Part shown: piece by piece, positions 1,734 through 34,071 of the stretch
How positions within the stretch are numbered: position 1 is the first letter of the stretch
Layout of the letters: each line of letters opens with the position of its first letter
Virus record (IMG/VR): IMGVR_UViG_3300027759_000046
Location: 189,138 to 253,137 of that record
Strand: one strand, 5' to 3'
Length of the DNA: 64,000 bases
Position numbers and translations under genes: made by a program
Notes under the pieces: model-generated
The model's input: only the letters and a program-made list of their open reading frames with translations
Databases searched by the model: none
What the model was told of the DNA's origin: nothing

Positions 1734-2540
1734 ATGAAACACACAATCATTAAAGACTTCAAAGGTTGGAACGTGCTAATGGAAAATGCAGGATTCATCG
1801 GTGAAGAAACGGTTGGAACCGCAGGTTCAGCTGGAACAGCCGGCACAGCAGGTACAACCGGAACAGCTGGTTCAGCTGGCACAGCAGGCGCTACCTCCGC
1901 TCCATTAACTGCAATCACGGCAGCAGACGGCGCGCTAACTGCTGAGGATATTAAAAAGGTACAGGCAATTGTCTACAATGCCCCACTAACTGACACTAAA
2001 TCATGTGACGGTAAAGTTGGCCCAAACACAAAGGCAAAAATTAAAGAGTTTAGAACTGCAAACGGCATCACTGACGAAACAGTTGAACCCAATCAGACTA
2101 CGGTAGGTCCAAAAACCTTGGCTAAGATGATTGAAAAAATTACTGCAGGATTTACGCCAGGCGGAACCGCTGGAACAGCTGGAACAGCCGGTGCAACTGG
2201 TGTATTCGATCAACGTAATGCAACTGACGACCAGGCTGCAACCAAGATTTGCGACATGATTGTTGCTAAATTCAAGGACACTGCTTTCTGGCAACCATTT
2301 AAAGGAACGTTTAACGATGATGAAGGTCAAGCAGGTTTTGCATATAACAATTGGTACACGACCGAGGTTATGCCTCTAATTAAGACGCTTAGACAAGGCG
2401 ATCCAAACATTGCTCGATTAGAAGCAGCCGATGCGGCAGTTCGTCAAAAATTAGCCGGCGGAATGGCAAACGATTCAGCTTCTTGGCAAATCACAACGCT
2501 TAACGGCGAGATGAAATATCAAGTAGACACAGATTTCTAA
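1734..2540 (+). CDS. putative virion protein with GTAG repeats and peptidoglycan-binding domain
   Basis: MKHTIIKDF...ME leader; GTAGSAGTAG tracts; DGKVGPNTKAKIKEFRTANGI resembles PG_binding_1. Confidence 0.65.
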   Translation: MKHTIIKDFKGWNVLMENAGFIGEETVGTAGSAGTAGTAGTTGTAGSAGTAGATSAPLTAITAADGALTAEDIKKVQAIVYNAPLTDTKSCDGKVGPNTKAKIKEFRTANGITDETVEPNQTTVGPKTLAKMIEKITAGFTPGGTAGTAGTAGATGVFDQRNATDDQAATKICDMIVAKFKDTAFWQPFKGTFNDDEGQAGFAYNNWYTTEVMPLIKTLRQGDPNIARLEAADAAVRQKLAGGMANDSASWQITTLNGEMKYQVDTDF

Positions 2541-2555
2541 AATAAACCAAGCTTA

Positions 2556-4334
2556 ATGAAGCATACAATTATAAAAGATTACAGGAGCTGGTTGTTTGAA
2601 TCAACTCAGTACATGACAGAAGCGGCTGATCCAAACACGCCTATTGAGACTCTATTACAAAATACTGATCTTGAAGGTCTTTATCAAAGAATCATGTCAA
2701 CCGATGCGGCCTCTAAGGGTTTACCTAATTACGCTAACGTAATGCAATGGTGGCATCAAGGCGGACCGGATTTGGGATTATGGAAGTCTCTATTTAAAGC
2801 GGGCGGCGAAGCCAAACGCGATAAGGTAAATTCAGCTCGTAGCATGTACTATTGGTTGGGAGGTTTTGCAACTAAGGGTCGTAGTGCTCAAAGTGCAGGC
2901 AAAGCAAACTATATCAAAAACGTTGAAGACTTCTGTACAGCAGTTAAGACCAATGCTCCAGCAATAGTTGCCGCAGTTAACGCATTCCCAAAACCTGCTG
3001 AAAAAACACGTTACGCAGGTTGGAACGAAGCAGCTGCTAAAGCAGATGCAGTTTTGGCTTTCTTACAGACAGCTAAGGCAAAGAGTCTTAACTTAAGCTC
3101 ACAGGCAGCAGCGATGCTAATTCCATACAGTGCAATTGACGGTCAACTATCAGTTAACAATGCACCAACACCGCCAGCAACCTATTTCAAACTTACCGCA
3201 GACACATTCACAAAAGACAAGACTGATGATAATTTATCGGTAACGTCTTATGCTTATCAAACAGGTCAATGGACTCTACAAACAAGCGCGGTAACAACTC
3301 TTCAACAATTACAGACAAACATTGCAACGCTAACATCAGCAATGGCCGATCAAACTAAACTTTCTACATATTTTTCAGCAGATAATACATTAAGCGCTGA
3401 GAATAAGAAAGTTATCCTAGATTTTGTTAACACCAAGGTACAGGCTTATCTTGAAAGAAAGAATAAGGCTCTTAAACCTGGAGAAACGGCAATGACTGTT
3501 GACTCTGCAATTAAAACTGCAACTGACCTTTACATTTCGCCAAATGGTACTAATTTGACTCTATCGCCTGCAACCAAGCAGCCATCACCAGAGCCAATCA
3601 CAGTTTCAGGCTCATATCCTGAAAATCCAAATGGCGATTGGAATTCAGCTGGTGCAAAGAAAGCTACTCAGTTCTTTGGTGACGATAAGATCCAGATTGA
3701 AGCAGGTCCTATTGCGGAAATGACAAACGGTATCAAATCGTATCTAGCTCAAATTAAAGCGATGGGCGCTCAAATTACTGGCGTAAAAATCTGGGGTATT
3801 TCATCTACTAGTGCTGTACCAAGTTCATACGATCCTGCAACAAAGGGTCCAAATCCTGACGCAGGCTACACGACTGCAAAGAACGGCCCGCTTGCTCAAG
3901 ACCGTTTGACCTCAATTAAAACTTCTCTACGTCAAATCTTTACTCAAAACGGCGTTACTGATAATTTGATAACGGAAGATGCGACTCAAGATAAAGTTAC
4001 TCCAAACATTGGAGCTGCTTGGACTGAACAAGATAAGGCTAAGTTTGCAAATCGCAAACAGCCAGGTAAAGAGGCTCTACTTAAAGAGTACGACGATAAA
4101 TTTGGCAAATACAAATATGCATTTGCTCGTTTTGAGATTACGTACACAATGACTCAGCAATTTACGGTTACACCACAGGCAGATCCTATTCCAAACTCAG
4201 ACTGGAAAGTTTACATTAACTGGATTGATGAAACTTGGACACCACCGACAATTAGCATTCCAGGAATAGGTTTTAAACCTAAATCTGGAGGTTCTCAAAG
4301 AGATTGGGGAAAAACTGACTGTCCAGTATTCTAA
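2556..4334 (+). CDS. putative virion protein with OmpA-like C-terminal region
   Basis: MKHTIIKDYRSWLFE leader; NGPLAQDRLTSIKTSL resembles the OmpA-like N..L...R motif. Confidence 0.5.
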   Translation: MKHTIIKDYRSWLFESTQYMTEAADPNTPIETLLQNTDLEGLYQRIMSTDAASKGLPNYANVMQWWHQGGPDLGLWKSLFKAGGEAKRDKVNSARSMYYWLGGFATKGRSAQSAGKANYIKNVEDFCTAVKTNAPAIVAAVNAFPKPAEKTRYAGWNEAAAKADAVLAFLQTAKAKSLNLSSQAAAMLIPYSAIDGQLSVNNAPTPPATYFKLTADTFTKDKTDDNLSVTSYAYQTGQWTLQTSAVTTLQQLQTNIATLTSAMADQTKLSTYFSADNTLSAENKKVILDFVNTKVQAYLERKNKALKPGETAMTVDSAIKTATDLYISPNGTNLTLSPATKQPSPEPITVSGSYPENPNGDWNSAGAKKATQFFGDDKIQIEAGPIAEMTNGIKSYLAQIKAMGAQITGVKIWGISSTSAVPSSYDPATKGPNPDAGYTTAKNGPLAQDRLTSIKTSLRQIFTQNGVTDNLITEDATQDKVTPNIGAAWTEQDKAKFANRKQPGKEALLKEYDDKFGKYKYAFARFEITYTMTQQFTVTPQADPIPNSDWKVYINWIDETWTPPTISIPGIGFKPKSGGSQRDWGKTDCPVF

Positions 4335-7136: not shown

Positions 7137-7166
7137 TTTATTTATCTACGACTCTCGAATAAATAA
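7137..7166. promoter_or_regulatory. divergent pair of (G/A)ATAAATAA late-promoter-like motifs
   Basis: GATAAATAAA on - and GAATAAATAA on +; same arrangement at 10827-10884 and 32883-32940; resembles the T4 late promoter TATAAATA. Confidence 0.7.
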
Positions 7167-10902: not shown

Positions 10903-12888
10903 ATGATTAATTCATTTATTCAAATGGTTAACGAATCAGCCGATTTAGAACTAGGCCAAGAAGGTCTTGTTGATGAGATGGGAGTTAAACGCCCAGAAAG
11001 TTTAACAGGCAGTGAAATGGGAACAATTCGTCAATCTTCAATTCAACACAGGCAAAATCAGACAAACGTTCCACGTAAAAAGAACTATCACGAATTGGTC
11101 GTGGAGCTAGTTGACGATTTAAAGCGTATGCCTAGAACAGAGATCACAATGGAGAAACCAGCAAATTCTCGATACTATTATCCAAAGTTACCGGCTGCTA
11201 TTGTGCAAAAAATGCGCGAAGCCTATGCACTAAACTCTAGATCATTTGTCCAAGATATTGGAAATTGGAGAGACATTAGTCCAAACGATTCAGACGCAAT
11301 CTATTTTAAGATTGAAGCACCTAGTGATCATCAACGAAGCCATTTTCCAAACGGCGGAATTCCGCCAATGCTTAGAGGAACTGGACTAGGTTACAAATTA
11401 TATAGAGCCCTACTTAAAACAGCCGGATATCTTTCTTCAAACCGTTCTGGATCAAATGAAAAAGATAAAGCTTGGGGTTCTCTACTTGCTCAAAAAACAA
11501 ATCCTGACGGAACTTTGTCAGTAGATGACGCTCACGCAATTATTGGTAAGTCCAATTGGATGGCACTAGACAAGGGAATGTCTGACCGTGGGAAAATAGA
11601 TGCAGCTGTCAGTTTCATAACTAACACAGTCGGAGTTCAACGAACTCAGCCCGATAAATTTGATATGGATGATGAGCTATTGTCAATTCTACCGGACGAT
11701 TTTCTGGTTAAATTGGACCCAGCTTATTTGCAATCACTAGTTGATGATGGTCGTATTACTCAGGAAAAATACAGACAAATTGAAGATTCAAGAAGTGAAG
11801 CTGACCGTCGTGAAAGAGAACGTCAAGCTCAAGCTGAAATTGAAGCACGCGAACGTCGTGCTAGAGAAGAGGCTGAGACTCGTCGTCGTTTAGCTAGTCG
11901 AATCCAACAGTTTGGTGCAGACCCAGACGCTGAATGGAGTGTTGGCGATTATATCGTAGTTAAGTCTTACCTATTTGACGCTTCATATAACGGTTTACCT
12001 ATTCGTCGAGTGGTTTCACAAAACGGCGGTACTTATATAGCTGTTAAAATCTCAGATGCAATTAGAATTGATAATGGCGATATTACTCCAAATCAAGCAA
12101 ACGATAATCGATCAACATCTGACAAATCACAATGGGTTAAAGTAAACCTTGATCAAATCCCAGATCTAACGCGAGTTAATTTAACTGACGCTGAGCGTAC
12201 GTACCTTGAGGGTCAAATGGATCCCGAAACTGCGGCTAGAGCAAGAGCAGAACGTGAGGAAGCTGAACGCGAAAGACGCGAAGCTGAACGTAGAGAAAAC
12301 GAGGAACGTGCTAGAAATAGAGAAACATTCGGTTCTTTACCCGATAATGCTGGTGAATTAAAGACTTCTCAAACTGCGAGAAATAATGGCTCAATCAGAG
12401 AAGCTGATCTATTAAAGAAATTTAGAGATTCATATTTCACAGATAGAATGGAGATCATTGTAATGGGACCGCAACAGAGAGAAGCTCTAAGAAATTCATT
12501 TGGTGTTCCAGTATTCATTGCATGGACCGGTTCATCAAGACGTCCAATACCAGCGTCTCTTGATACAATAAATAATGATCCACAATCTGTTAAATTAACG
12601 AATGCTGTAACCGGCTTTACAATTGATGCACCGTTTACTGGTCTTGGCCTAATGGCATATCCATTAACTGAAGTAACAGTTGACGATAAAATGAGAGCTA
12701 GAGCAGGAACTCACTATTATATCTCTGGCCATAAGAATGCCTTTGGTATTCTCGCAAAGAGTGATTATGGTGCAGTTAATACATCTGCTCAGAAATTTAT
12801 CTACGTTAAAGCATACGGATACGGAGAACGTAGCGTATCAGTTAGATTAGATTTATTAAGAAAGATTGGAACTCCTACTGAGCTGTAA
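10903..12888 (+). CDS. leader-tagged multidomain protein with GNAT acetyltransferase-like motif
   Basis: MINSFIQMVNE; IPPMLRGTGLGYKLYRALL matches the GNAT acetyl-CoA motif R/QxxGxG; Glu/Arg-rich coiled-coil linkers. Confidence 0.6.
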   Translation: MINSFIQMVNESADLELGQEGLVDEMGVKRPESLTGSEMGTIRQSSIQHRQNQTNVPRKKNYHELVVELVDDLKRMPRTEITMEKPANSRYYYPKLPAAIVQKMREAYALNSRSFVQDIGNWRDISPNDSDAIYFKIEAPSDHQRSHFPNGGIPPMLRGTGLGYKLYRALLKTAGYLSSNRSGSNEKDKAWGSLLAQKTNPDGTLSVDDAHAIIGKSNWMALDKGMSDRGKIDAAVSFITNTVGVQRTQPDKFDMDDELLSILPDDFLVKLDPAYLQSLVDDGRITQEKYRQIEDSRSEADRRERERQAQAEIEARERRAREEAETRRRLASRIQQFGADPDAEWSVGDYIVVKSYLFDASYNGLPIRRVVSQNGGTYIAVKISDAIRIDNGDITPNQANDNRSTSDKSQWVKVNLDQIPDLTRVNLTDAERTYLEGQMDPETAARARAEREEAERERREAERRENEERARNRETFGSLPDNAGELKTSQTARNNGSIREADLLKKFRDSYFTDRMEIIVMGPQQREALRNSFGVPVFIAWTGSSRRPIPASLDTINNDPQSVKLTNAVTGFTIDAPFTGLGLMAYPLTEVTVDDKMRARAGTHYYISGHKNAFGILAKSDYGAVNTSAQKFIYVKAYGYGERSVSVRLDLLRKIGTPTEL

Positions 12889-13627
12889 CTGGATGCATTT
12901 CGTAGAATCTAGCAAGACGCTCACGAAATTTAAAATAGTATTCTTTCATTTCGCTAGCTGACATTGTAAAATGCTGAGGCTTATCGTCGACTTCATTTGA
13001 AATCCAGATCTGACATCTTGTAGTTTTAATCTGCATTCTATCCCATACTGCAACTGAATATGCGGCAACTTGGTGTTTATAGTCTTCGATCCATTTCTCG
13101 TCTTTTGGTTTACGAGCCGTTTTGAAATCGACGATCGCATAATCGTCCGTTATTAATTGTGAAACGTTATCGACTGTTCCAGCGTATCCGCCGTCTCTTG
13201 GTGTCCATAAGAATCTTTCTTGTGCAATAACCTTTTTAATTTCCTCAAATGACTTTGACTTAATAAAATTGTAGAATAAGGTTCCACCGACTATTTTTGC
13301 ACGATTGTCAAACTTCTCTATCTCATCGTCTAACCTAGATAAGGATAGAGTTTCTTCTAATCGGTCCTTTGAGCTTAATGATGCTGGAAGATTAAGGTAA
13401 ATTTCACAGAGTCTGTGCATTACTGTTCCACGATTAGCTGCATCCTTGCCAATTTGGTCTGCTTTCTGATGGCCAACTCGGTCTCTCCATGCGTTTAGAC
13501 CTGTCTTATCTGAAGTCTCTCCGAGGACAGTAGTCACACTCGGAAAGGTTCCAATTATATGAGTATCATTACTTACTTGGTAATACCTGAAGCCATTGAT
13601 CTCAACTCTCTTTATTTTCTCGTTCAT
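12875..13627 (-). CDS. PD-(D/E)XK exonuclease (T4-like phage exonuclease)
   Basis: PSVTTVL, RGTVMH, YAGTVD, IVDFKT and QVAAY motifs. Confidence 0.9.
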   Translation of the reverse strand: MNEKIKRVEINGFRYYQVSNDTHIIGTFPSVTTVLGETSDKTGLNAWRDRVGHQKADQIGKDAANRGTVMHRLCEIYLNLPASLSSKDRLEETLSLSRLDDEIEKFDNRAKIVGGTLFYNFIKSKSFEEIKKVIAQERFLWTPRDGGYAGTVDNVSQLITDDYAIVDFKTARKPKDEKWIEDYKHQVAAYSVAVWDRMQIKTTRCQIWISNEVDDKPQHFTMSASEMKEYYFKFRERLARFYEMHPVTAQ

Positions 13628-13681
13628 TTGGATAAATAATTAAACTAGTATCTAGTACATAAAATACTCGTAAAGTTTAAC

Positions 13682-14056
13682 ATGCTTAAGAAATTTGATG
13701 AATTTAATGAAACCTTGAATGAGGGTTTTTGGGACTGGTTGACAGGCAAGTCTGAAAAGGGAGAAAAGAAGGACAAAGTGACCAGTGCTAAAGAGGGTCC
13801 AATTGATGCAAAGGTAGCAGAATATTATAAAACGCTACAGGATTTTGCTGATGCTGGCAAATCTATTGAAGTTCAGTCACTTGGCAATATGTCTTATTCT
13901 AAAATGGTTGAAGATATTCAACTTGCGTTGGAATTCCTAGGTTATAAACTTGAAAAATACGGAGTTGATGGATACTTTGGCCCAGAGACTTCTGCTGCCA
14001 TTGTTAAATTCAATCAAGATACCTTAAATAAAATACCAGATTCTCAACATGATTAA
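13682..14056 (+). CDS. peptidoglycan-binding domain protein, leader-tagged
   Basis: MLKKFDEFNETLNE; IQLALEFLGY...GVDGYFGPETSAAIVKFN. Confidence 0.8.
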   Translation: MLKKFDEFNETLNEGFWDWLTGKSEKGEKKDKVTSAKEGPIDAKVAEYYKTLQDFADAGKSIEVQSLGNMSYSKMVEDIQLALEFLGYKLEKYGVDGYFGPETSAAIVKFNQDTLNKIPDSQHD

Positions 14057-15299
14057 AGGATTCGATCAATTTACTGGAAAGATTAATGAAGCTTCAAACG
14101 GTCAGCTAAATGATGCTGACCTAGTTCCAATTCAGCCACTCGGTAAGAGCGGCGGAAACCATAAATTAAATTCACAAGCAGCAAAAGCATACGAAGAAAT
14201 GAAGAAGGCTGCTGAGGCAGACGGTGTAACTTGGGGTATTACTGACTCGTATCGAGATTATGAAGCCCAAGTTGATGTTGCTGCACGTAAAGGTCTTTAC
14301 AAAAATGGAGGATTGGCGGCAGTTCCTGGAACATCAAATCACGGATGGGGTAGTGCTCTAGATCTTGACCTAAATTCTGAAGCTCAAGAATGGTTAAAGA
14401 AGAACGCTGAAAAATTTGGATTCACAAATATTCCAAGAGAACCTTGGCATTGGGAACATAAAGCCAGTGTTGAGCTAGCAAAGACTGGAAAAGAAGGCAC
14501 TGGATCTTCAGCTAAAGTCGGATCAGTGCTAATTGATTCAGATCTAATTAAGAGACTGATTGCAAAATTAAAAGAGAAGAATTTCAGCCAAAAGGATCTA
14601 GACCAGTACATTGCTAAGTCTTCGTCAGGTAAAGGCGCAAACTTTAAAAGCGGTGAAAAGTTTCCTGCTGAAAATATGAAAGCCATTGAAAAAGCAATGG
14701 ATGATCATGGTATAACAAATGAATATGCTAGAAAGGCAATTCTTGGAGTTATTTCAAAAGAATCTCCAGGTTTAAAATCTGAAATAAGTTATTCTGGAAC
14801 AAGTGCTGCTCGAATTAGAGAAGTTTTCCCAAGTAAATTTGGTGATAAATCTGATTCTGAGATTGACGACATTAAGAAAGACGATGCTATGTTTTGGGAT
14901 GTAGTGTATGGCGGTAAATACGGAAACACTGAACCTGGAGACGGTTCAAAGTACCGAGGCCGTGGTTTTAATGGAATAACATTCAAATCAAATTACGAAA
15001 ACTTACAGAGAATTTACGACAGGTCTGGCGCTAAGGTTGGCAATATTGATATTGTTAAGAATCCTGAACTTCTTGAAAAACCTGAAGTTGCAGCCGAATT
15101 CGCTGTTCTATATTTCATGGATACTTTTAAACGTCACGGTAAGGATGTGAATTCCTACACTGATTTAGAGTCAGCCGTTACTGATTACGTTCAAGCAAAT
15201 GCAGGCTGGGGAACTTCTTTAGCTGGTGCAGTCACATCAAAGGGTTTACAAAAGGCAATGGACTTTGCGAAATCATTAGATACAGACCAAATTGCTTAA
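14049..15299 (+). CDS. M15B (VanY-like) peptidase fused to GH19-like glycoside hydrolase
   Basis: SYR..EAQ, PGTSNHGWGSALD and EPWHWE; GNTEPGDGSKYRGRGFNGITFKSNY; MIKGFDQF..INE leader. Confidence 0.88.
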   Translation: MIKGFDQFTGKINEASNGQLNDADLVPIQPLGKSGGNHKLNSQAAKAYEEMKKAAEADGVTWGITDSYRDYEAQVDVAARKGLYKNGGLAAVPGTSNHGWGSALDLDLNSEAQEWLKKNAEKFGFTNIPREPWHWEHKASVELAKTGKEGTGSSAKVGSVLIDSDLIKRLIAKLKEKNFSQKDLDQYIAKSSSGKGANFKSGEKFPAENMKAIEKAMDDHGITNEYARKAILGVISKESPGLKSEISYSGTSAARIREVFPSKFGDKSDSEIDDIKKDDAMFWDVVYGGKYGNTEPGDGSKYRGRGFNGITFKSNYENLQRIYDRSGAKVGNIDIVKNPELLEKPEVAAEFAVLYFMDTFKRHGKDVNSYTDLESAVTDYVQANAGWGTSLAGAVTSKGLQKAMDFAKSLDTDQIA

Positions 15300-15301
15300 C
15301 T

Positions 15302-16219
15302 ATGAAACACCTACTTGAATATAAAATATTTGAATCAGCTGAGAGGATTATTGATGCAACGGCTGGCGCTGGAACAGATGAGGAATCTCTGGTGCAAGCG
15401 ATTGCTGGCATTCAAACGCCTGAAGACCTATCTAAAATTGATGCAGAACTTGCTTCAAACCTAAATTCTGAATATAAAAGCGTAAAAGATGCAATAGCTG
15501 GAGAGCTTGGAGTTTTTGATACAGTTTACAAGGACGCAATTGCTCAAAAGTTTAGTCAGTTAGGTTTGCCTAACTACTTAGAAGACGGAATAATTCCAGT
15601 TAAATCAGATAAAGTAGAAAAGACTCAAATTGAAAAACCTATCAAATCTGCCATGGCTGAAACACAAACTCTTTCTCAAGGAAAAATCAATATTAATTCA
15701 AATAAATCTGCTCCGTTAATTGTTGTATTCGGTGGAATTGATGTGGGTGGACGATCGAGTGGTTCTTATATGTATGACTATTTTAAAGAGGCTACTTTAT
15801 CGAAAGCGACAACATTTATTGCAAATTCTTCAAAAATAGACGGCTCTAAAGCCTGGTCTGAAATATCTGGTTTAAACTTAACTCCATCTAAAAAGATTCT
15901 CTACCTATTCTCTGGTGGATATTTACCTGGGATGAGCTTGCTAAATAAGGTAGCTGCATCCGAGTGGGCTGCAATTTATCTAGTTGATATTTGGATAGGT
16001 CAAAACTCAAATACTGAGAATTTCTATACAAAACTCACAGCGGACTTTCCTGACAAAGTAAAATACTACTATACTGGCGGAGAGAATTCAGCAGGTGGAT
16101 CCAATAACCTAAAGGCAAAGAAGGAAATGATTGACTCTGTTAGCTATTCAAAGGGTGCAGGCTCTCACATGGGAGCAAATGATATTGCGGTAAACGACCT
16201 TAATGGAGATATCTCCTAG
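15302..16219 (+). CDS. annexin-like repeat fused to alpha/beta-hydrolase-like domain
   Basis: GAGTDEESLVQAI...AIAGELG annexin-like; VVFGG and LFSGG hydrolase-like; MKHLLEYKIFE leader. Confidence 0.5.
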   Translation: MKHLLEYKIFESAERIIDATAGAGTDEESLVQAIAGIQTPEDLSKIDAELASNLNSEYKSVKDAIAGELGVFDTVYKDAIAQKFSQLGLPNYLEDGIIPVKSDKVEKTQIEKPIKSAMAETQTLSQGKININSNKSAPLIVVFGGIDVGGRSSGSYMYDYFKEATLSKATTFIANSSKIDGSKAWSEISGLNLTPSKKILYLFSGGYLPGMSLLNKVAASEWAAIYLVDIWIGQNSNTENFYTKLTADFPDKVKYYYTGGENSAGGSNNLKAKKEMIDSVSYSKGAGSHMGANDIAVNDLNGDIS

Positions 16220-16842
16220 TCTTCTTTAGTTGATTTAGTATTTCCGAACTTAGATAAGAATATGTCGGCAGTCTTCTCAAGAACACTATTGAATGCTGTG
16301 TCAGATTCACGAATTGATTTAAAATAGTCAACGAAACCTACCATATCTGCAATTTTATAAGTATTAATCTTGACCATATCAGATGAATTTCCGTCAATTG
16401 AGACAAATGAATCTCCTGTTACTTTTAAGACAATACCAGTATGACCTTTTCCAGATGAAGCGCCGCCTCGTGACTTAATAAAGACTTGACCCGGCTGAAC
16501 CTTTGAGGGATCGCGTGAGTCTATCTTATTTTCAGCAGGTGCAGAATTCCAATGAGACATAACTGCTGCAGTTTTAGGTAGAGGATTTTCAATACTAAGT
16601 TTTGAACAAAGCTCATCGAACATTGCATAAACGAATGCCATGCACCATGGATTACCTGCGCCTAGTCCAAGCTTACCGAGCATACCCTTAACCATTGACC
16701 CGTCATTATTTCCTTCTTCTTTTTTCCCAACGTAATCTGCTAACACATGACCAAATGTTTCGGCTGCATTCGTTGCAGTATCAGGTTTAATCGCTAGTTC
16801 AGCTTCAGTTATGAATTGATTAAAATCTTTAATAAGTTTCAT
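16216..16842 (-). CDS. CHAP-domain amidase/peptidase, leader-tagged
   Basis: PWCMAFV, GHTGIV and IDGNS motifs; MKLIKDFNQFITE. Confidence 0.9.
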   Translation of the reverse strand: MKLIKDFNQFITEAELAIKPDTATNAAETFGHVLADYVGKKEEGNNDGSMVKGMLGKLGLGAGNPWCMAFVYAMFDELCSKLSIENPLPKTAAVMSHWNSAPAENKIDSRDPSKVQPGQVFIKSRGGASSGKGHTGIVLKVTGDSFVSIDGNSSDMVKINTYKIADMVGFVDYFKSIRESDTAFNSVLEKTADIFLSKFGNTKSTKED

Positions 16843-16861
16843 TCTGGATAAATTCTTTGAA

Positions 16862-17089
16862 TTATTTATCTAGGATAACCATATCCTTATAGAACATAAT
16901 TCCAAAGTCCCAGATTAAAAATGTGAATCCTATTACAAATAGACCGGTGTGTACTCCCTGTTCAATAAACCAGCCGTATGGATTGTAACAGAAAGTCAAA
17001 TTTGGGATTGGGCAAAATTGCTTGAAGTAGCCCTTTTCCCAAGTTTTGTGGCAATAAGGTTTTGCCGTAAATTTTAGTTTTGCTTCCAT
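16862..17089 (-). CDS. small membrane protein
   Basis: 75-aa ORF with hydrophobic C-terminus, directly after thyA. Confidence 0.5.
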   Translation of the reverse strand: MEAKLKFTAKPYCHKTWEKGYFKQFCPIPNLTFCYNPYGWFIEQGVHTGLFVIGFTFLIWDFGIMFYKDMVILDK

Positions 17090-17091
17090 AT

Positions 17092-18234
17092 TTAGTTGCT
17101 TAGTGGTGCTTTTATTGCTGGGTGTGATTGATAGTTTTCTAATATAATATCATTTATTGAACTACAGTGAATGCCGTCTCTAACATGGACAGTTGGTAAT
17201 TTAAAAGGCTCTCGTGTACGATATGGTATTTTGTATGCATCATAATATTCGCTTAATCCTCCACCGAACGGAACTTGCTCATCAACTGCTGTTTGATAAA
17301 AATCTCCCATTGCAGTCTTTAACATTTCGTGACGTTCGTCTGGTGAGTAGCTTCTTCCGATTTGCTCTTCAACTGCATCCACGTGATTTAAGTAAAGGTG
17401 AACATCTCCTAGGTTTCCAATCAATTGATCAGGTATCATGTTGACTTCGTCAGCTAGCATAGTTAATAGTAAGCCATAAGATGCTATGTTGAATGGTAGC
17501 CCTAAGAACGTATCTACTGAACGTTGATTCCACATCAAAGAGATTGCTCTGGTTGGTATGTTTGAACCATCTAACATTTGATGAGTATATGGTGCAAAAG
17601 TACGAGCAATACCATCTCTTTTCTTTTTATATTCTGTTCTTTCTTCCAAACTCAACTCTCTTGTATAAACTTGGAATCCATAGTGACAAGGTGGAAGTAC
17701 CATCTGGTCCAATTCACCTACATTCCAAGCATTAACCATTAAACGTCTTGAGTCTGGGTTTGTTTTAAGGTCTTGTATTAGATTTTTGATTTGGTCTACT
17801 CCGCCATCAAATATAGCATTCCAATTCCTCCATTGTCTACCATAAATTGGACCCAACTCACCCCACTTCTTAGCAAACTCTTCATCCTTCATTGACTCGA
17901 CGAAAGCTTCTTCCTTTGTTACAAAAGGTCCCCAATCGATCACACCATTATGCTTTTCGTAATTCTTAATAGCATCACCATTCCAGATATGACAGTTATT
18001 ATCAATTAGGTACTTGATATTAGTATCACCACGTAAGAACCATAACAGCTCAGTCACAACAGATTTGAATGGCATCTTCTTAGTAGTAAGAAGAGGAAAT
18101 CCTTCTTGCATATTATGACGAATTGTATAGCCGAAGATTGAACGCGTTCCTGTGCCAGTTCGATCCTCCTTTACTACACCATATTCATTTATTGCATGAA
18201 GTAGATCTATGTACTGTTTATCTAAGTTATTCAT
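17092..18234 (-). CDS. thyA: thymidylate synthase
   Basis: DRTGTG, ELLWFL, GPIYG.QWR, LPPCH, QRSVD.FLGLPFN and GDVHLY. Confidence 0.97.
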   Translation of the reverse strand: MNNLDKQYIDLLHAINEYGVVKEDRTGTGTRSIFGYTIRHNMQEGFPLLTTKKMPFKSVVTELLWFLRGDTNIKYLIDNNCHIWNGDAIKNYEKHNGVIDWGPFVTKEEAFVESMKDEEFAKKWGELGPIYGRQWRNWNAIFDGGVDQIKNLIQDLKTNPDSRRLMVNAWNVGELDQMVLPPCHYGFQVYTRELSLEERTEYKKKRDGIARTFAPYTHQMLDGSNIPTRAISLMWNQRSVDTFLGLPFNIASYGLLLTMLADEVNMIPDQLIGNLGDVHLYLNHVDAVEEQIGRSYSPDERHEMLKTAMGDFYQTAVDEQVPFGGGLSEYYDAYKIPYRTREPFKLPTVHVRDGIHCSSINDIILENYQSHPAIKAPLSN

Positions 18235-25346: not shown

Positions 25347-25562
25347 TTATAACGCTAATTCGGATTTCGGTTTTACTTTTAGCGAATTTTTTTCTAAAAA
25401 AGTTTGAAAACCTTCGTAGATGTAATTCGTTGTGCACTTAGTCGACTGTTGCAGAGTCTTTATGTAGGTGTGGCCGTTGGGCGCTAAGTAAAATCCAATT
25501 ACAGTTTCTTCGCCTTGATCGCCAATCAGGATCAAGTCTTCAAGTTGAATTGAGTCTCTCAT
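25347..25562 (-). CDS. hypothetical protein
   Basis: ORF overlapping the upstream stop codon. Confidence 0.5.
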   Translation of the reverse strand: MRDSIQLEDLILIGDQGEETVIGFYLAPNGHTYIKTLQQSTKCTTNYIYEGFQTFLEKNSLKVKPKSELAL

Positions 25563-25777
25563 TGTTTTTTATAGCGTCTGCGAAAGAAGATAGAGAGCCC
25601 AAAGAATAGAGCCGCAATACAGTACAATACGAAATTCGCTCTCCACAAAGTCCCAGTGAGGTGGATTAGCCAGTACTGGACGATGTCGAACCCGAACGGA
25701 TTGAAGAACAGAGCTATCATCGCGCACCATGTCGCTAGGTTGCCCAATAACGTTTTTCTCCAAGTTTCTACTATCAC
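25559..25777 (-). CDS. small two-TM membrane protein
   Basis: two hydrophobic segments and basic tail; start uncertain. Confidence 0.55.
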   Translation of the reverse strand: MIVETWRKTLLGNLATWCAMIALFFNPFGFDIVQYWLIHLTGTLWRANFVLYCIAALFFGLSIFFRRRYKKQ

Positions 25778-25825
25778 TATCCATAGATTTTTTGAAATTT
25801 GTAAATTCGAGTTTATTTATCCAGT

Positions 25826-26107
25826 TTACCACTTCGCTTCTTGACCAATATCCGGTAGAGCACAATGAAATCCTTGTAGTCTAGTTTTGGCCTCAAGAAA
25901 ACAGCCGCAAATTTTACACTGAACGAATGTTGGATTGAAATGATCGCATGCTTTACATAAGTCCATGCGACGAGTCTTTTCAATTTCCGGAACAAAAACC
26001 TTGTTCAAGATTCTTGACATTACTGTCGGTTGGCTTGATGTTTGAGAACCGCCGCCGCATCCACAATTAGCTGTGGTCGTTTCAGTAGTTTGGTTAGTTT
26101 CTGACAT
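25826..26107 (-). CDS. Cys-rich small protein (DUF6171-like)
   Basis: CGCGG; R...CKAC...QCKICGCFL.AK.RL...HC. Confidence 0.65.
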   Translation of the reverse strand: MSETNQTTETTTANCGCGGGSQTSSQPTVMSRILNKVFVPEIEKTRRMDLCKACDHFNPTFVQCKICGCFLEAKTRLQGFHCALPDIGQEAKW

Positions 26108-30064: not shown

Positions 30065-31603
30065 TTATCTTCTAACCTTTAGGAAGTCAGAGAATGAAGT
30101 AATCACAGTAGCTTCAGAAACTGCGGTAAATCCTCCTTGTTGACCGCCTTGTTGACCGCCTTGAACAGGAGTCTTTTGCATGTCTTGGGAAATCTTATCA
30201 ACTTGTTGAGCAAGAGGTCCTCCACCTGTAATACCGGCCCAATAGCCGTTACATAGAGAAAGCATGTCTCCGCTTATTTCAGAAGCAACGCAGTACTCGT
30301 AAAAGTCTCCGTCTTCTCCAAAATTCTTAGACCATACTTGTTTAACAACTGCTGCTGTTTGTGGGCTAAGTGAAGTGATCATGAAGGTGATTTGTAATTC
30401 GTCAGCTCCGTCAGTATAACCTTTTGCTAATTCTCTAATTTGAGTACAGAATGCAAATGCTGCATCTTCAGCTGTGAAGTTTTGAGCTTGAACTGGTTCT
30501 GCACCGCTTGCTGCGGCTGAGAGAGCTCCGCCTGTTGCCATTCCGGCACCAACTCCTGCTCCGATTTTTCCACCGACTTGAGCAGCTTTGCCTGCTTGAG
30601 TTAAGGTTGAGAAACCTGATTGAGCTGCTCTAAAGTCATTTGCACCAGCTGCCAGTCTTGAAACGTTTGCCGCTCCTTGAACTCCAACACCAGTTGCTTC
30701 AGCTCCAGTTGTTGCCATTGCACCGCTTCTAAATGCTGTGAAACCTCCTCTTAATTTATTAACGGCTCCAGCTGCTCTAACCGCTCTAGCTCCAGTAATA
30801 AGGCCTTTTGCCGCGGCTCCTACACCGAATGTACAAAGCCCAATCGCAACGTCTACTACCAATGATTCTAGAAAATCTACTCCCATTCCGGTCGCAATAT
30901 CTTGTTCAGTAACGGTATCACCGTAAACTGCTCTAGCTAAAACTTCAGGAGTTCCAGAGAAATCTCCTTTAACCGCATCCATTAGGGACTCATTATATGC
31001 TGTCTGATATGCAGTACCTAATGCTTTGAATATTTCTGGCACGTTTGCACCTTTTTCGTAACCAATACGATAGATTGCTCCAGCTAATGCACCAAGCTTG
31101 TCTTCGTCTGTTCCAAAATTTAATCCGAAAATTGAACTTCCTTCAACACCCTTTCTAAATTGAGTTGCTAAGTAATTCATATCTAAACCTTCGATTACCT
31201 TAGACGTTGAATCCCAATCAATATAAACTCCAGATTTTCCAGACGCGGTTTTACCGCCAGCTACATAGATTGAAACTGCGTATTCTTGGTCTCCGATTTT
31301 TACGGTAACTCGACCTGGACCAGATTGGCCAGACGCTACTAAGTTTGCAGACTCAGCGTTAAGCTTTAAGAATTCTGCGTCCGCTTTATCGCCTTTGCTA
31401 GCATTATCAATAATTAATTTCTTGATTGCCTGAACTTCCGGAGAATCAGTTGGTTCAATTGAAATGGTATTACCTTCAGGTTTTGCACCAGGCGAACCGG
31501 CTGTGCCAGCGGTACCAGCTGAACCGGCTTCAGTTAGCGAATAGTAGCCCAAAGACTTGCTCTCGTTTAATATTGCGTAATTTCCTATGTTTATGTGTCT
31601 CAT
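30065..31603 (-). CDS. putative virion protein with annexin-like repeats and Gly/Ala-rich membrane segments
   Basis: FGTDEDKL..AVKGDFSG and GYTDGADE..VASEISG; hydrophobic VAIGLCTFGVGAAA; LNE leader and GSAGTAG repeat. Confidence 0.55.
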   Translation of the reverse strand: MRHINIGNYAILNESKSLGYYSLTEAGSAGTAGTAGSPGAKPEGNTISIEPTDSPEVQAIKKLIIDNASKGDKADAEFLKLNAESANLVASGQSGPGRVTVKIGDQEYAVSIYVAGGKTASGKSGVYIDWDSTSKVIEGLDMNYLATQFRKGVEGSSIFGLNFGTDEDKLGALAGAIYRIGYEKGANVPEIFKALGTAYQTAYNESLMDAVKGDFSGTPEVLARAVYGDTVTEQDIATGMGVDFLESLVVDVAIGLCTFGVGAAAKGLITGARAVRAAGAVNKLRGGFTAFRSGAMATTGAEATGVGVQGAANVSRLAAGANDFRAAQSGFSTLTQAGKAAQVGGKIGAGVGAGMATGGALSAAASGAEPVQAQNFTAEDAAFAFCTQIRELAKGYTDGADELQITFMITSLSPQTAAVVKQVWSKNFGEDGDFYEYCVASEISGDMLSLCNGYWAGITGGGPLAQQVDKISQDMQKTPVQGGQQGGQQGGFTAVSEATVITSFSDFLKVRR

Positions 31604-31625: not shown

Positions 31626-32834
31626 TTATTTCTTTTCTTCGGTTCCTTCTGCTGGAGCGGTTGCCGTCTGTACTGCAACTGGAGCAGTTGCTCCTCCAGG
31701 TTTATTGATATAGATGAAACCTGCTTGACCAGCTGTTCCGCTTGTTCCGCCAGTACCACCAGTACCACCAGTACCAGACGTTCCGCCAGTAGTTACAACT
31801 GGGTTAGTTCCTTTACCTGCAAGTTCCCAAAGCTCTTTTAATCGAGCTAGAGTTATTCCAACTTTTGTGCAGTATTTAGCAAGATATTCAACATCATTTG
31901 AGTTGACCGCATTATGTTCAGCTTCTTTTGCATCAAAGAACATTCCAAAGGCAGTTGCTGTGTTTGGACCGTAATTACCGTCCGGATTGCCTAATTTATC
32001 TTGAACCCTTTTTCCAGCCTCGCCGTATTTCTCAGCAAGAACTTTTTCTTTAAGGATTAGTTGAACGAATTTTACCTCTTGTCCCTTTGACCCTCTAGAA
32101 ACTTTAATTCCGGTTTGAAGAGCTCTACCGTTAGGATTTGGGTCTTGCTTATTACTAACAATCTCAAATGCAAGAAGTTTCTCAGTTAAGTATTTTAAAA
32201 TTTGATCGTCCGCAGCGGTGTCTTTCCAATCCCATGGAAATACTCCGCCAGTACCGCCTGTTCCAGAAGAACCGGCTGATCCAGCTGTACCGGTCGTACC
32301 TGCTGTTCCAGAAGAACCACTTGTTCCAGTTTCAACTTTAATAATCTCTGGTTTAACTACTGGATTTAGGTCGGAATTCATTTTGGTAGCGTCCTCGGCT
32401 TTGTATAATTTAAGTTTACCATTTGAACTAGTTAAGAAAGGCTGCGCTTTTGATACGTCGTATTTGGAAGCATCTCTAACAGATAAGATTCCCTTAAAGA
32501 TTTGTTGGCCTGTTGCTGAACGCTCTTTGTCTTTAGTAACTGCAATGAATACGATATTATTTGCGACCTTTGACATTACTACTGCGCTCGCTGATAATTG
32601 ATCAGCTGCATTCTTTTTAGCCTCATCTGGATTCTCAGTTTCCATTTTCATAACGAAATGAAATGCAGCGATTTCGCCAGCATTAGCGTCCGGCTTATCT
32701 TCGTCAACTTTGAATTTTTGATCAGGGGTTAAAAATGAGAGTAGTGCTTCGTTTAGAGGCATTGTGCCCTTGGTTCCAGTTGACTTAGTATAGCTTTCGT
32801 TAATAAAGTCGTCAAATGATTTAAAACTTTTCAT
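31626..32834 (-). CDS. putative virion protein with GT/SG repeats and peptidoglycan-binding domain
   Basis: MKSFKSFDDFINE; RGSKGQEVKFVQ...DGNYGPNTATA; GTSGSSGTAG tracts. Confidence 0.65.
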   Translation of the reverse strand: MKSFKSFDDFINESYTKSTGTKGTMPLNEALLSFLTPDQKFKVDEDKPDANAGEIAAFHFVMKMETENPDEAKKNAADQLSASAVVMSKVANNIVFIAVTKDKERSATGQQIFKGILSVRDASKYDVSKAQPFLTSSNGKLKLYKAEDATKMNSDLNPVVKPEIIKVETGTSGSSGTAGTTGTAGSAGSSGTGGTGGVFPWDWKDTAADDQILKYLTEKLLAFEIVSNKQDPNPNGRALQTGIKVSRGSKGQEVKFVQLILKEKVLAEKYGEAGKRVQDKLGNPDGNYGPNTATAFGMFFDAKEAEHNAVNSNDVEYLAKYCTKVGITLARLKELWELAGKGTNPVVTTGGTSGTGGTGGTGGTSGTAGQAGFIYINKPGGATAPVAVQTATAPAEGTEEKK

Positions 32835-32946: not shown

Positions 32947-34071
32947 ATGAAATACTTATTTGAATTTGCTCAATACTCTGCACAACCTGCTCATACTGCA
33001 TCTTTTGGTGTGCTCGGTGATCTGGGTAAAAAGTCTAAATTTGGAGAACAGACTGGATATTTTAAGAGCCTGATGGAAGAAGCTCAAGCTGGAGGCATGG
33101 ATGCCTTTGTGTTTACAGAGTTTTCACCAGAAGGAGTGACTGCTTGGAGCCTGGACGGAGATGACTGGCATGAATCAAAAAAGGCTTTACCTTCTGTATT
33201 TTACGATAGAAGTTTCAGAAAGAAAGACGGTGCTGGTAAAACTTCAAATACTCGAGCTCTATGCTCGATGGGTTGCACTCCATTAAACTCACCAGAGTTT
33301 AGAAAGCTCGCGCTAGACAAGCATTTAATGTATCAAAATTTAGCAGATCATTCAATTGACGGAATGGGCTTACCTCATACTGAGAAGTACAGCGATTCAA
33401 AATTGATTCCATTCTTGCAAAAACATCCATCAGCTATTCTTAAACCTAGATTTGGTTCAGGTGGGCATGGCATAATCAAACTTTCTAAATCGGATTCAGG
33501 TTATGGAATCAATTATAAGGAAAATTCAATAGAGTGCCAGGAACCAGAATTGCTAAATAAACTTAATGAAATTCGTCAAAAGATGAATGCTAGCAAGAGA
33601 CTCTATATTATTCAAGAGTGCATTGACTTGCCTAAATACAATAATGGAGTATTTGACGTTCGCGTAATTTATCAAAAGGGCAAGGGCGGAAGTCCTCTAC
33701 GTACAGGTATGGCTGTAAGGCTTGCTGCACCAAATAAGGTTACAGCAAATCTACACCAAGGCGGAAGTCGAGAAACTCTAGGAAATGTATTGGGAACCTT
33801 GTTTAATCAAGACATGAATGGAGAAATTGCTGAATCGATTAGAAATTACTCAAAGGAGATTTTTGAGATATTAGACAGTAAAGTCGGGCCAATTGGAGAA
33901 GTCGGTATAGATTTCCTAATTGATCAAGGAGGTAGAGTTCATCTAATTGAGGTCAACTCTGTCCCAGGTAGAAACCTATTTCATATCTTACCGGATATTA
34001 GAGAGACTGCTATTAAAAGACCAGTCGAATACGCTAAGCACTTACTAGATAAACAAAAAAAGCCGCAATAA
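32947..34071 (+). CDS. YheC/YheD-like ATP-grasp protein
   Basis: YDR, DKH, LKPRFGSGGHGI, YIIQE, FDVR, ANLHQGG, GIDF and IEVNSVPG. Confidence 0.9.
   Translation: MKYLFEFAQYSAQPAHTASFGVLGDLGKKSKFGEQTGYFKSLMEEAQAGGMDAFVFTEFSPEGVTAWSLDGDDWHESKKALPSVFYDRSFRKKDGAGKTSNTRALCSMGCTPLNSPEFRKLALDKHLMYQNLADHSIDGMGLPHTEKYSDSKLIPFLQKHPSAILKPRFGSGGHGIIKLSKSDSGYGINYKENSIECQEPELLNKLNEIRQKMNASKRLYIIQECIDLPKYNNGVFDVRVIYQKGKGGSPLRTGMAVRLAAPNKVTANLHQGGSRETLGNVLGTLFNQDMNGEIAESIRNYSKEIFEILDSKVGPIGEVGIDFLIDQGGRVHLIEVNSVPGRNLFHILPDIRETAIKRPVEYAKHLLDKQKKPQ

What the first reader, a model, noticed from the sequence alone, without database searches (positions are those of the whole stretch)
13682..16842. Cluster of four leader-tagged cell-wall proteins
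Seen: a PG-binding protein, an M15B peptidase-GH19 fusion, an annexin-like/hydrolase-like protein and a CHAP enzyme lie together. All carry the leader, sit behind late motifs and lack signal peptides. Further tagged PG-binding or OmpA-like domains occur at 1734, 2556 and 31626. Inference: these are head-packaged, ejected wall-breaching components (ejectosome-like) rather than ordinary endolysins.
Basis: partly seen in the sequence, partly recalled or inferred. Interest (0 to 1): 0.65.

Follow-up and report, generated by a model that had tools for sequence, protein, structure and literature searches.

The report
Capsid-addressed cell-wall enzymes of jumbo phage
Four neighbouring genes of an uncultured 253-kb T4-like jumbo phage encode cell-wall-binding and cell-wall-cutting proteins that each start with a short tag almost identical to phage T4's capsid-targeting sequence, so they are probably loaded into the phage head and delivered at infection rather than used for ordinary lysis; this is inferred from sequence only.

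Summary
None has a signal peptide. All begin with a 11-14-residue leader.

The leader matches the T4 capsid-targeting sequence at its functional positions (aromatic 4, Phe 7, aliphatic 8, Glu 10). The genome (253 kb, contractile tail) encodes a T4-type prohead protease fused to a scaffold-like array of 14-residue repeats ending in the same motif, a Gp23-type capsid protein and a gp55-type late sigma factor.

About 37 ORFs genome-wide carry the leader. It is conserved at protein level, not DNA level, and is kept on orthologues down to about 40% identity.

Untagged lysis-type enzymes exist elsewhere (GH19 endolysin beside a small membrane protein; signal-anchored SLT). The gp5-like hub has no lysozyme domain.

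Best reading: prohead-targeted, protease-processed capsid cargo that supplies muralytic activity at entry. Packaging is well supported by inference. Ejection into the periplasm and wall breaching are untested. A T7-type channel-forming ejectosome is not supported. Only two of the four genes have an exact late motif. The PG-binding/OmpA-like claims at 1734, 2556 and 31626 are only weak leads.

The parts
13632..13639 (+). late-promoter-like motif ATAAATAA, 42 nt upstream of P1; probable promoter of the P1-P2-P3 operon
   Evidence: The motif has 82 copies against about 43 in shuffles. 63 of them lie within 80 nt upstream of a same-strand start.
13682..13723 (+). P1 leader MLKKFDEFNETLNE (predicted cleavage after Glu14)
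   Evidence: conserved in orthologues in L005, L012 and L013
13682..14056 (+). P1, 124 aa: leader + GFWDW motif + PG_binding_1 (aa 75-112; nt 13904-14017)
14049..14090 (+). P2 leader MIKGFDQFTGKINE (predicted cleavage after Glu14); its start overlaps the P1 stop by 8 nt
14049..15299 (+). P2, 416 aa: leader + VanY/M15B zinc peptidase (aa 37-137; nt 14157-14459; SNH98..D105, EPWH134) + GH19-type muramidase (aa 205-358; nt 14661-15122; KE238S, YRGRG)
15302..15334 (+). P3 leader MKHLLEYKIFE (short variant; predicted cleavage after Glu11)
15302..16219 (+). P3, 305 aa: leader + single annexin-like five-helix repeat (aa 13-86; weak) + low-confidence linker + alpha/beta-hydrolase domain (aa about 118-305; S204, D229, H289). 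In homologues the hydrolase domain is fused to PG_binding_1, VanY or CHAP.
16216..16842 (-). P4, 208 aa: leader MKLIKDFNQFITE (nt 16804-16842) + CHAP domain (aa 62-152; nt 16387-16659; C67, H134); convergent with P3, with stop codons overlapping
16862..16869 (-). late-promoter-like motif ATAAATAA, 19 nt upstream of P4
1734..2540 (+). further tagged protein (268 aa): leader, collagen-like GTAGSAG linkers, sub-threshold PG_binding_1
2556..4334 (+). further tagged protein (592 aa); the OmpA-like C-terminus is only a lead
31626..32834 (-). further tagged protein (402 aa); the PG_binding_1-like region is only a lead
10903..12888 (+). tagged 661-aa protein of unknown function upstream of the cluster (leader MINSFIQMVNE); syntenic in relatives

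Best explanation
The four genes encode late-expressed cargo proteins of the phage head. Each carries a 11-14-residue N-terminal propeptide of the T4 capsid-targeting-sequence type.

Inferred steps, in order:
1. The propeptide binds the scaffolding core of the assembling prohead.
2. The T4-type prohead protease cuts after the Glu of the [LIVF]-x-E end.
3. The mature PG-binding protein, the M15B/GH19 enzyme, the serine hydrolase and the CHAP enzyme stay inside the DNA-filled capsid.
4. At infection they leave through the contractile tail. They supply local peptidoglycan-degrading activity that the lysozyme-less tail hub cannot give.

Host lysis is left to separate, untagged enzymes.

Shown from sequence: the domains, the leader, its match to T4's functional positions, the T4-type head and late-transcription genes, the untagged lysis genes, and the domain shuffling.

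Inferred: packaging, cleavage, ejection, and the site and time of action.
For: 1. T4 IPII/IPIII begin MKTYQEFIAE|A and IPI begins MKTFKEFTS...ITE|A. In T4, targeting maps to residues 4 and 7 and processing to residues 8 and 10 (PMC9026906). Leaders here, such as MKTFSQFINE, MKSFKQFLNE and MKLIKDFNQFITE, have aromatic, Phe, aliphatic and Glu at the equivalent positions.
2. The genome has Peptidase_S77 (1e-9; phrog_207 4e-35), a Gp23 capsid protein (9e-43), a sheath and a large terminase.
3. The protease ORF carries eleven 14-residue repeats. Nine end in aromatic-x-x-aromatic-[LIV]-x-[E/Q], the leader core. A leader-tagged 119-aa gene lies next to the capsid gene.
4. About 37 unrelated ORFs carry the leader, always at the N-terminus. 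Codons at conserved residues vary as in the rest of the genome.
5. Orthologues at 39-82% identity, and essentially all full-length members of the P3 family, keep a leader. A natural P1-P2 fusion keeps an internal leader-like site at the junction.
6. The late motif ATAAATAA is enriched before tagged genes (18/37 against 40/298, p=2e-6) and also precedes structural genes. A gp55-type sigma factor is present.
7. Wall-active genes are enriched among tagged ORFs (p=1e-3), including a fifth, a GH24 lysozyme at G000 171610-172434.
8. Untagged lysis-type genes exist: GH19 (phrog_181 6e-59) followed by a 92-aa membrane protein and another lysin-like ORF, and SLT with a signal anchor beside a small membrane protein.
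9. The hub is 270 aa with an OB fold only.
10. The M15, CHAP and GH19 domains hit tape-measure and hub lysin modules. A cyanophage gp5-like hub contains the GH19 relative.
Against: There are no virion proteomics, and no cultured carrier was found among those checked. T4's tagged proteins act in the cytoplasm, so release into the periplasm is an added assumption. The cargo here is mostly acidic (median pI 5.3), unlike T4's basic internal proteins. P1 has no catalytic domain. Two of the four genes lack their own late motif. The docking test of leader against protease gave no verdict. The muralytic census used a limited set of Pfam families, so a tail-borne lysin of another family could have been missed.
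Confidence: 0.6

Rival explanations
1. The proteins are packaged in the capsid as proposed, but their job after delivery is not to breach the wall at entry. They might remodel or mark the sacculus against superinfection, pre-weaken the wall for later lysis, act on precursors, or serve partly as internal structural or packing proteins.
For: The packaging evidence is the same as for the main explanation. The T4 paradigm delivers tagged proteins to the cytoplasm (PMC3012670). VanY-type enzymes can act on precursor pentapeptides (established knowledge). P1 is binding-only.
Against: GH19, GH24, CHAP and PG_binding_1 need polymerised peptidoglycan. The hub lacks a lysin, so an entry role fills an obvious gap. 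The domains are related to hub and tape-measure lysins.
Confidence: 0.17
2. They are accessory endolysins used at lysis. The leader would then be a different kind of signal, for example an amphipathic membrane-association helix or an inhibitory propeptide removed to time activation, and not a capsid address.
For: The P2 GH19 half and P1 hit endolysin PHROGs best. The genes are late, as lysis genes are. No proteomic proof of packaging exists.
Against: The same leader heads about 37 unrelated proteins, most not wall-related. It matches the T4 CTS at its functional positions. Its core is repeated in the protease-scaffold ORF. No holin-like neighbour is present: the neighbours are an exonuclease and ThyA. 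Canonical untagged lysis genes lie elsewhere.
Confidence: 0.13
3. The 'leader' is a nucleotide-level element (a translation-initiation region or recombination box), or simply shared ancestry of paralogues, with no protein-level function.
For: T-even internal-protein loci are known to be recombinationally plastic (established knowledge). The leaders lie at gene starts.
Against: Identical residues use the identical codon in only 54% of pairs, as expected from genome codon usage. The bodies behind the leader are unrelated folds. The leader survives in orthologues at about 40% identity while adjacent linkers diverge.
Confidence: 0.03

Closest known systems
Phage T4 internal proteins IPI/IPII/IPIII and Alt with the capsid targeting sequence (CTS), processed by prohead protease gp21
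   Same: Both have a short N-terminal propeptide with the same key positions (aromatic 4, Phe 7, aliphatic 8, Glu 10) and an [LIV]-x-E end. Both have an S77-family protease, a Gp23-type capsid, and diverse unrelated cargo behind one conserved tag.
   Different: There are about 37 tagged genes here instead of a handful. The cargo includes at least five wall-active proteins, which the papers I found do not report for T4-type tagged proteins. The cargo is mostly acidic. Protease and scaffold-like repeats lie in one ORF. The host is probably Bacteroidota. Nothing is shown experimentally.
Head-internal virion-associated lysins of podoviruses (T7/T3 gp16, SP6 gp36, phiKMV gp36)
   Same: Muralytic activity is stored inside the capsid and delivered at infection (PMC5380687).
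   Different: Those are single, very large (107-143 kDa) core proteins that form an extensible tail or channel. Here there are several small soluble enzymes without hydrophobic segments in a contractile-tailed phage, addressed by a cleavable tag.
Tail-tip lysins of myoviruses (T4 gp5; cyanophage gp5-like hubs with a GH19-like insert; phiKZ gp181)
   Same: They have the same presumed task of local peptidoglycan digestion at entry. P2's GH19 half is related to the insert of a cyanophage gp5-like hub.
   Different: Here the hub is 270 aa with only the OB fold. The enzymes are free-standing genes with a capsid-type leader.
Ejection proteins of phiKZ-like giant phages (phiKZ, 201phi2-1, SPN3US)
   Same: Both are jumbo myoviruses with many protease-processed inner-head proteins that are ejected (PMC5694885).
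   Different: Those use an S80 protease with an S/A/G-x-E motif, and their propeptides are often over 100 residues. Here the leader is short and T4-like, with an aliphatic or aromatic residue two positions before the Glu. No muralytic set is described among the ejection proteins in those papers.
Phage P1 DarB N-terminal capsid-targeting signal
   Same: An N-terminal signal is sufficient for capsid loading of cargo (PMC9024508).
   Different: The P1 signal is an unrelated sequence carried by anti-restriction cargo, and P1 uses a tail-associated muralytic enzyme.

Membership tests
T4-type CTS-bearing head cargo | N-terminal 10-20-residue propeptide with T4's targeting positions (aromatic 4, Phe 7) and processing positions (aliphatic 8, Glu 10) | tested here: met
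   P4 and about 19 others are canonical. P1 and P2 have a 3-residue insertion like T4 IPI's longer propeptide. P3 is a short variant.
T4-type CTS-bearing head cargo | Genome encodes a gp21-family (S77) prohead protease and a Gp23-type capsid protein | tested here: met
T4-type CTS-bearing head cargo | Scaffold/core proteins carry the same cleavage motif many times | tested here: met
   eleven 14-residue repeats, nine ending in the leader-core motif
T4-type CTS-bearing head cargo | Protein physically present in the mature head, with the propeptide removed after Glu | not testable with these tools
   Needs virion mass spectrometry. The docking job gave no verdict.
T4-type CTS-bearing head cargo | Ejected into the host with the DNA | not testable with these tools
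   Needs infection experiments.
Virion-associated peptidoglycan hydrolases | Muralytic domain with intact catalytic residues | tested here: met
   (P2, P3, P4). P1 is binding-only.
Virion-associated peptidoglycan hydrolases | Distinct from the phage's lysis endolysin | tested here: met
   Untagged GH19 + membrane protein + second lysin-like ORF, and signal-anchored SLT + membrane protein.
Virion-associated peptidoglycan hydrolases | Structural component of the virion | not testable with these tools
   Inferred only from the leader.
Canonical endolysin | Located in a lysis cassette next to holin/spanin-type membrane proteins | tested here: not met
   The neighbours are a PD-(D/E)XK exonuclease and ThyA. 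There is no strong TM segment in P1-P4.
T7-type ejectosome (gp14/gp15/gp16) | Large internal core proteins with membrane-spanning or channel-forming parts, one bearing the lysin domain | tested here: not met
   P1-P4 are 124-416 aa, with maximum 19-residue hydropathy of at most 1.03, and the tail is contractile.
phiKZ-type ejection proteins | S80 protease with an S/A/G-x-E motif and long propeptides | tested here: not met
   The leaders are 11-14 residues with [LIVF]-x-E. S77 scores above S80 (33.1 against 28.7 bits), though both families match.
Annexin repeat (P3 N-domain) | About 70-residue five-helix repeat with the G-x-G-T-[DE] loop | tested here: inconclusive
   PDB annexin V E about 1e-3 over aa 14-53. 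The model has five helices, pLDDT 57-80. No Pfam hit even at E<=5.
Alpha/beta-hydrolase serine enzymes (P3 C-domain) | Fold with nucleophile-acid-His triad after the canonical strands | tested here: met
   Foldseek hits to esterases, cutinases and DPP-IV at E about 1e-4. S204 follows strand 198-203, D229 follows strand 224-228, H289 follows strand 282-286. All three are invariant in 34 sequences. The substrate is unknown.

The most novel reading that the evidence does not exclude
A large, so far uncultured clade of jumbo myoviruses, probably infecting Bacteroidota, uses a T4-type capsid-targeting tag as a general address label. It loads some 37 different proteins (about 12% of its coding capacity) into the head. 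The load includes a complete peptidoglycan toolkit: two glycosidases, a zinc peptidase, a CHAP enzyme, a new PG-associated serine-hydrolase family and binding modules. This toolkit is ejected and replaces the tail-tip lysozyme of classical myoviruses.
Probability: 0.4. Interest if true: 0.75.

Novelty: new variant of a known kind. Interest (0 to 1): 0.64.

Why it matters
If true, it extends the T4 capsid-targeting mechanism far beyond the T-even phages, both in phylogeny and in scale. It would show that contractile-tailed phages can carry their wall-breaching enzymes as capsid cargo rather than as tail parts.

It also gives a simple sequence rule (the leader) for predicting the injected proteome of many uncultured jumbo phages. 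That proteome includes dozens of unknown proteins that are prime candidates for early host take-over or anti-defence functions.

It defines an unnamed alpha/beta-hydrolase family that is repeatedly fused to peptidoglycan-binding and lytic domains.

The near-identity of the tag to T4's suggests it could be tested directly in the established T4 packaging system.

Tried and rejected
- Docking of the protease domain (aa 1-215) with the first 45 residues of P4 gave no answer, score 0.00. This is not evidence either way.
- PDB sequence search with P4 found nothing.
- tblastn of P3 against sequenced phages found nothing.
- Pfam at E<=5 on the proteins at 2556 and 31626 and on P3 found nothing. Atlas look-alikes for 2556 (OmpA) and 31626 (PG_binding_1) stayed under the 0.9 mark, so they are leads only.
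- A rigid back-translated leader pattern gave 8 hits in this genome and 0 in the control. It gave none in Flavobacterium phage immuto, Tenacibaculum phage PTm1 or Prevotella phage Lak-B5, and one leader-like hit in the uncultured phage LR756500. The pattern covers only one leader form, so absence is weak evidence.
- The sigma-70 promoter and intrinsic-terminator scan of 13400-17200 was uninformative.
- The nucleotide-level explanation of the leader was rejected by the codon test.
- Two family scans were first sent with locus coordinates off by one and were re-sent corrected (then 39, 40).
- The large representative-protein search, the read-laying tools and alternative genetic codes were not used.
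- Literature searches found no description of T4-type tags on muralytic cargo in the held library. Subscription-only papers are not covered.
Full report
WHAT IS THERE

The window is the last 64 kb of a 253,137-bp IMG/VR virus record (CheckV 94% complete, about 38% GC).
- P1 (13682-14056, +, 124 aa) has a PG_binding_1 domain.
- P2 (14049-15299, +, 416 aa) is a VanY/M15B zinc peptidase (aa 37-137) fused to a GH19-type lysin (aa 205-358). The GH19 half matches solved phage endolysins such as 4ok7.
- P4 (16216-16842, -, 208 aa) has a CHAP domain.
- P3 (15302-16219, +, 305 aa) has no Pfam hit.

P3 in more detail. Its N-terminus matches one annexin repeat weakly (E about 1e-3). An AlphaFold model built on 34 homologues has mean pLDDT 78, with the C-domain mostly above 90. 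It shows a five-helix N-domain, a disordered linker and a C-domain. The C-domain matches esterases, cutinases and DPP-IV-type serine peptidases. S204 (in F-S-G-G), D229 and H289 are invariant and sit after the canonical strands.

In 334 database homologues this C-domain is very often fused to PG_binding_1. It is fused once to VanY plus PG_binding_1, and in locus L006 to CHAP plus PG_binding_1. It is therefore best read as an unnamed wall-directed serine hydrolase.

Catalytic signatures of P2 and P4 are intact. None of the four has a hydrophobic N-terminus, while two neighbouring ORFs have obvious signal peptides.

THE LEADER

All four proteins begin with M-[KLI]-K-x-F-x-x-F...[LIF]-x-E. Genome-wide I count about 37 ORFs with such a start, about 20 of them in the window.
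- An anchored PSSM finds 19 sites of at least 16 bits. All are at N-termini, and there are none in 20 proteome shuffles.
- The proteins behind the leader are unrelated. Most are ORFans. Others include a nucleotidyltransferase, a DUF5824 protein and a GH24 lysozyme.
- Conserved residues use synonymous codons in genome-typical proportions, so selection acts on the peptide.
- Orthologues in related IMG/VR contigs at 39-82% identity keep the leader. So do essentially all full-length members of the P3 family.

WHAT THE LEADER IS

I fetched T4's own genes. IPII and IPIII start MKTYQEFIAE|A, and IPI starts MKTFKEFTS...ITE|A. A review of T4 head assembly states three things (PMC9026906):
- The first ten residues of IPIII are the capsid targeting sequence.
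- Targeting depends mainly on residues 4 and 7.
- Processing depends on residues 8 and 10.

Leaders here, such as MKTFSQFINE and MKSFKQFLNE, have aromatic, Phe, aliphatic and Glu at exactly those positions. The longer P1/P2 form parallels T4 IPI's longer propeptide.

The genome has the matching machinery:
- A Peptidase_S77 prohead protease (phrog_207 4e-35).
- A Gp23-type capsid protein next to it.
- A 1010-aa tail sheath.
- A large terminase and a baseplate wedge protein.

The protease ORF continues into eleven 14-residue repeats. Nine end in aromatic-x-x-aromatic-[LIV]-x-[E/Q], which is the leader core. This is what one expects of a scaffold that is chopped up by the same protease, as T4 gp22 is (PMC5694885). 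A small leader-tagged gene lies directly beside the capsid gene.

In L013 and L015, P1 and P2 are one 442-aa protein. It retains a leader-like site...FESFSEMLDE|AQNG, at the junction. That fits a processing site rather than a mere start context.

That the T4 protease cuts after [L/I]-x-E is established knowledge (Black, Showe and Steven). The papers I could read show it only by example.

LATE EXPRESSION

ATAAATAA resembles the T4 late promoter TATAAATA. It occurs 82 times against about 43 in shuffles. 63 copies lie within 80 nt upstream of a same-strand start, peaking at 15-25 nt. It precedes the protease/scaffold, sheath, baseplate and many tagged genes.

Tagged genes carry it far more often than others (18/37 against 40/298, p=2e-6). 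A gp55-type late sigma factor is encoded (phrog_234 2e-17).

Of the four genes, only P1 (motif at 13632-13639) and P4 (motif at 16862-16869) have the exact motif. P2 overlaps P1 by 8 nt and P3 starts 2 nt after P2, so P1-P2-P3 looks like one late operon.

ENDOLYSINS OR CARGO?

A six-frame census was run with PG_binding_1, Phage_lysozyme, SLT, M23, Amidase_2, GH19, CHAP and NlpC/P60, plus family scans.

Tagged wall-active proteins:
- P1, P2, P3 and P4.
- A GH24 lysozyme at G000 171610-172434.
- The weak PG-binding protein at window 1734.

Untagged wall-active proteins:
- A strong GH19 endolysin at G000 147015-147626 (phrog_181 6e-59). It lies behind a late motif and is followed by a 92-aa membrane protein and a second lysin-like ORF.
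- An SLT transglycosylase with an N-terminal signal anchor, next to a 107-aa membrane protein.
- A DUF2589 + PG_binding_1 protein.

So ordinary lysis candidates exist and do not carry the leader.

The gp5-like hub is 270 aa. It matches only the OB-fold part of 'hub and tail lysozyme' profiles.

Related domains occur in virion proteins of other phages:
- The M15 part of P2 hits a tape-measure PHROG, and P4 hits a 'baseplate hub and tail lysozyme' PHROG.
- The best isolate match to P2's GH19 half lies inside the gp5-like hub of a T4-like cyanophage.

Known head-internal lysins are podoviral (T7 gp16 and relatives), and myoviral ones are in the baseplate (PMC5380687).

Related phages shuffle the same modules (PG_binding_1, M15, GH19, CHAP, P3 hydrolase) behind one leader. 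This argues that they work as a set.

MECHANISM AND LIMITS

The most likely sequence of events is:
1. Late synthesis.
2. Tag-mediated capture by the scaffold core.
3. Cleavage after Glu.
4. Retention in the filled head.
5. Exit through the tail at infection.
6. Local wall digestion.

Steps 2-6 are inferred. The weakest link is the compartment. T4's tagged proteins work in the cytoplasm (PMC3012670), so periplasmic release is an assumption.

The cargo is mostly acidic, unlike T4's internal proteins. The T7-style 'ejectosome' analogy holds only for 'lysin stored in the head'. P1-P4 are small and soluble, with no channel-forming features.

The host is inferred to be Bacteroidota, probably Flavobacteriia, on two grounds:
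- ThyA DNA is 78% identical to Flavobacterium phages.
- The nearest capsid proteins are in huge uncultured phages, Prevotella Lak phages and Tenacibaculum phages.

No cultured carrier of the leader was found among those checked.

NOVELTY

The CTS principle, processed ejection proteins of giant phages, and head-stored lysins of podoviruses are all known. I found no description of three things in the searchable literature:
- A T4-type tag on a whole muralytic toolkit.
- Its use on about 37 genes in a distant jumbo-phage lineage.
- The pairing with a lysozyme-less hub.

I rate it a new variant of a known kind. It is of solid interest but rests on inference.

Noticed in passing
whole window; e.g. 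1062, 1734, 2556, 5578, 6656(-), 7116(-), 7174, 8265, 10903, 21450(-), 23849, 31603(-), 32834(-), 36131(-), 59587: About 20 ORFs in the window (about 37 in the 253-kb genome) start with the same T4-CTS-like leader. Most have no known domain, so they are candidates for injected host-takeover or anti-defence proteins.
   Followed up: partly
outside the window: G000 64429-66411 (-), locus L002: The prohead protease (S77) and a scaffold-like region lie in one 660-aa ORF. The scaffold-like part holds eleven 14-residue repeats whose ends mimic the leader core. An internal start giving a separate scaffold protein was not examined.
   Followed up: partly
outside the window: G000 147015-148525 (+) and 129297-130123 (-): Two untagged lysis-type gene groups: GH19 endolysin + 92-aa membrane protein + second lysin-like ORF, and signal-anchored SLT + 107-aa membrane protein.
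   Followed up: partly
outside the window: G000 171610-172434 (-): A fifth leader-tagged wall enzyme: a GH24 phage lysozyme (4e-10) with leader MKHINLFESWLNE.
   Followed up: partly
outside the window: G000 157896-158663 (-): A leader-tagged protein with a nucleotidyltransferase (NTP_transf_2) domain, a possible injected enzyme.
   Followed up: no
window 1734-2540, 30065-31603 (-), 31626-32834 (-): Tagged proteins contain collagen-like G-T-A-G-S-A-G linkers. The 512-aa protein at 30065-31603 also has an annexin-like G-T-D-E-D loop at aa 164, like P3's N-domain.
   Followed up: no
window 32947-34071 (+): A YheC/D-type ATP-grasp enzyme (7e-55) begins MKYLFEFAQY, which is leader-like but has no Glu cleavage end. 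It is unclear whether it is cargo.
   Followed up: no
window 7138-7166: Back-to-back late motifs on opposite strands (- at 7138, + at 7159) lie between two divergent tagged genes, suggesting a bidirectional late promoter region.
   Followed up: no
database homologues of P3 (e.g. P0054, P0072, P0098) and locus L007 5758-6759: Many called ORFs extend upstream of the leader Met into a hydrophobic-looking stretch. In this genome such extensions are translations of the AT-rich late-promoter region (ATAAATAA reads as ..INN..). For distant homologues a real membrane anchor is not excluded.
   Followed up: partly
loci L012, L013/L015, L005 against window 12875-18234: The stretch between the PD-(D/E)XK exonuclease and ThyA is a variable islet. 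Relatives hold P1+P2 only, a P1-P2 fusion, or all four genes. P2's C-terminal domain is swapped for a different one in L012 and L013.
   Followed up: partly
outside the window: G000 25444-25887 (-): A T4 gp55-type late sigma factor (phrog_234 2e-17) is encoded, consistent with the T4-like late motif.
   Followed up: yes
window 13724-13750: Directly after the predicted cleavage site, P1 and its orthologues share a Trp-rich motif G-F-W-D-W-L-T-G-K. Its role is unknown; it may be a membrane or scaffold contact.
   Followed up: no
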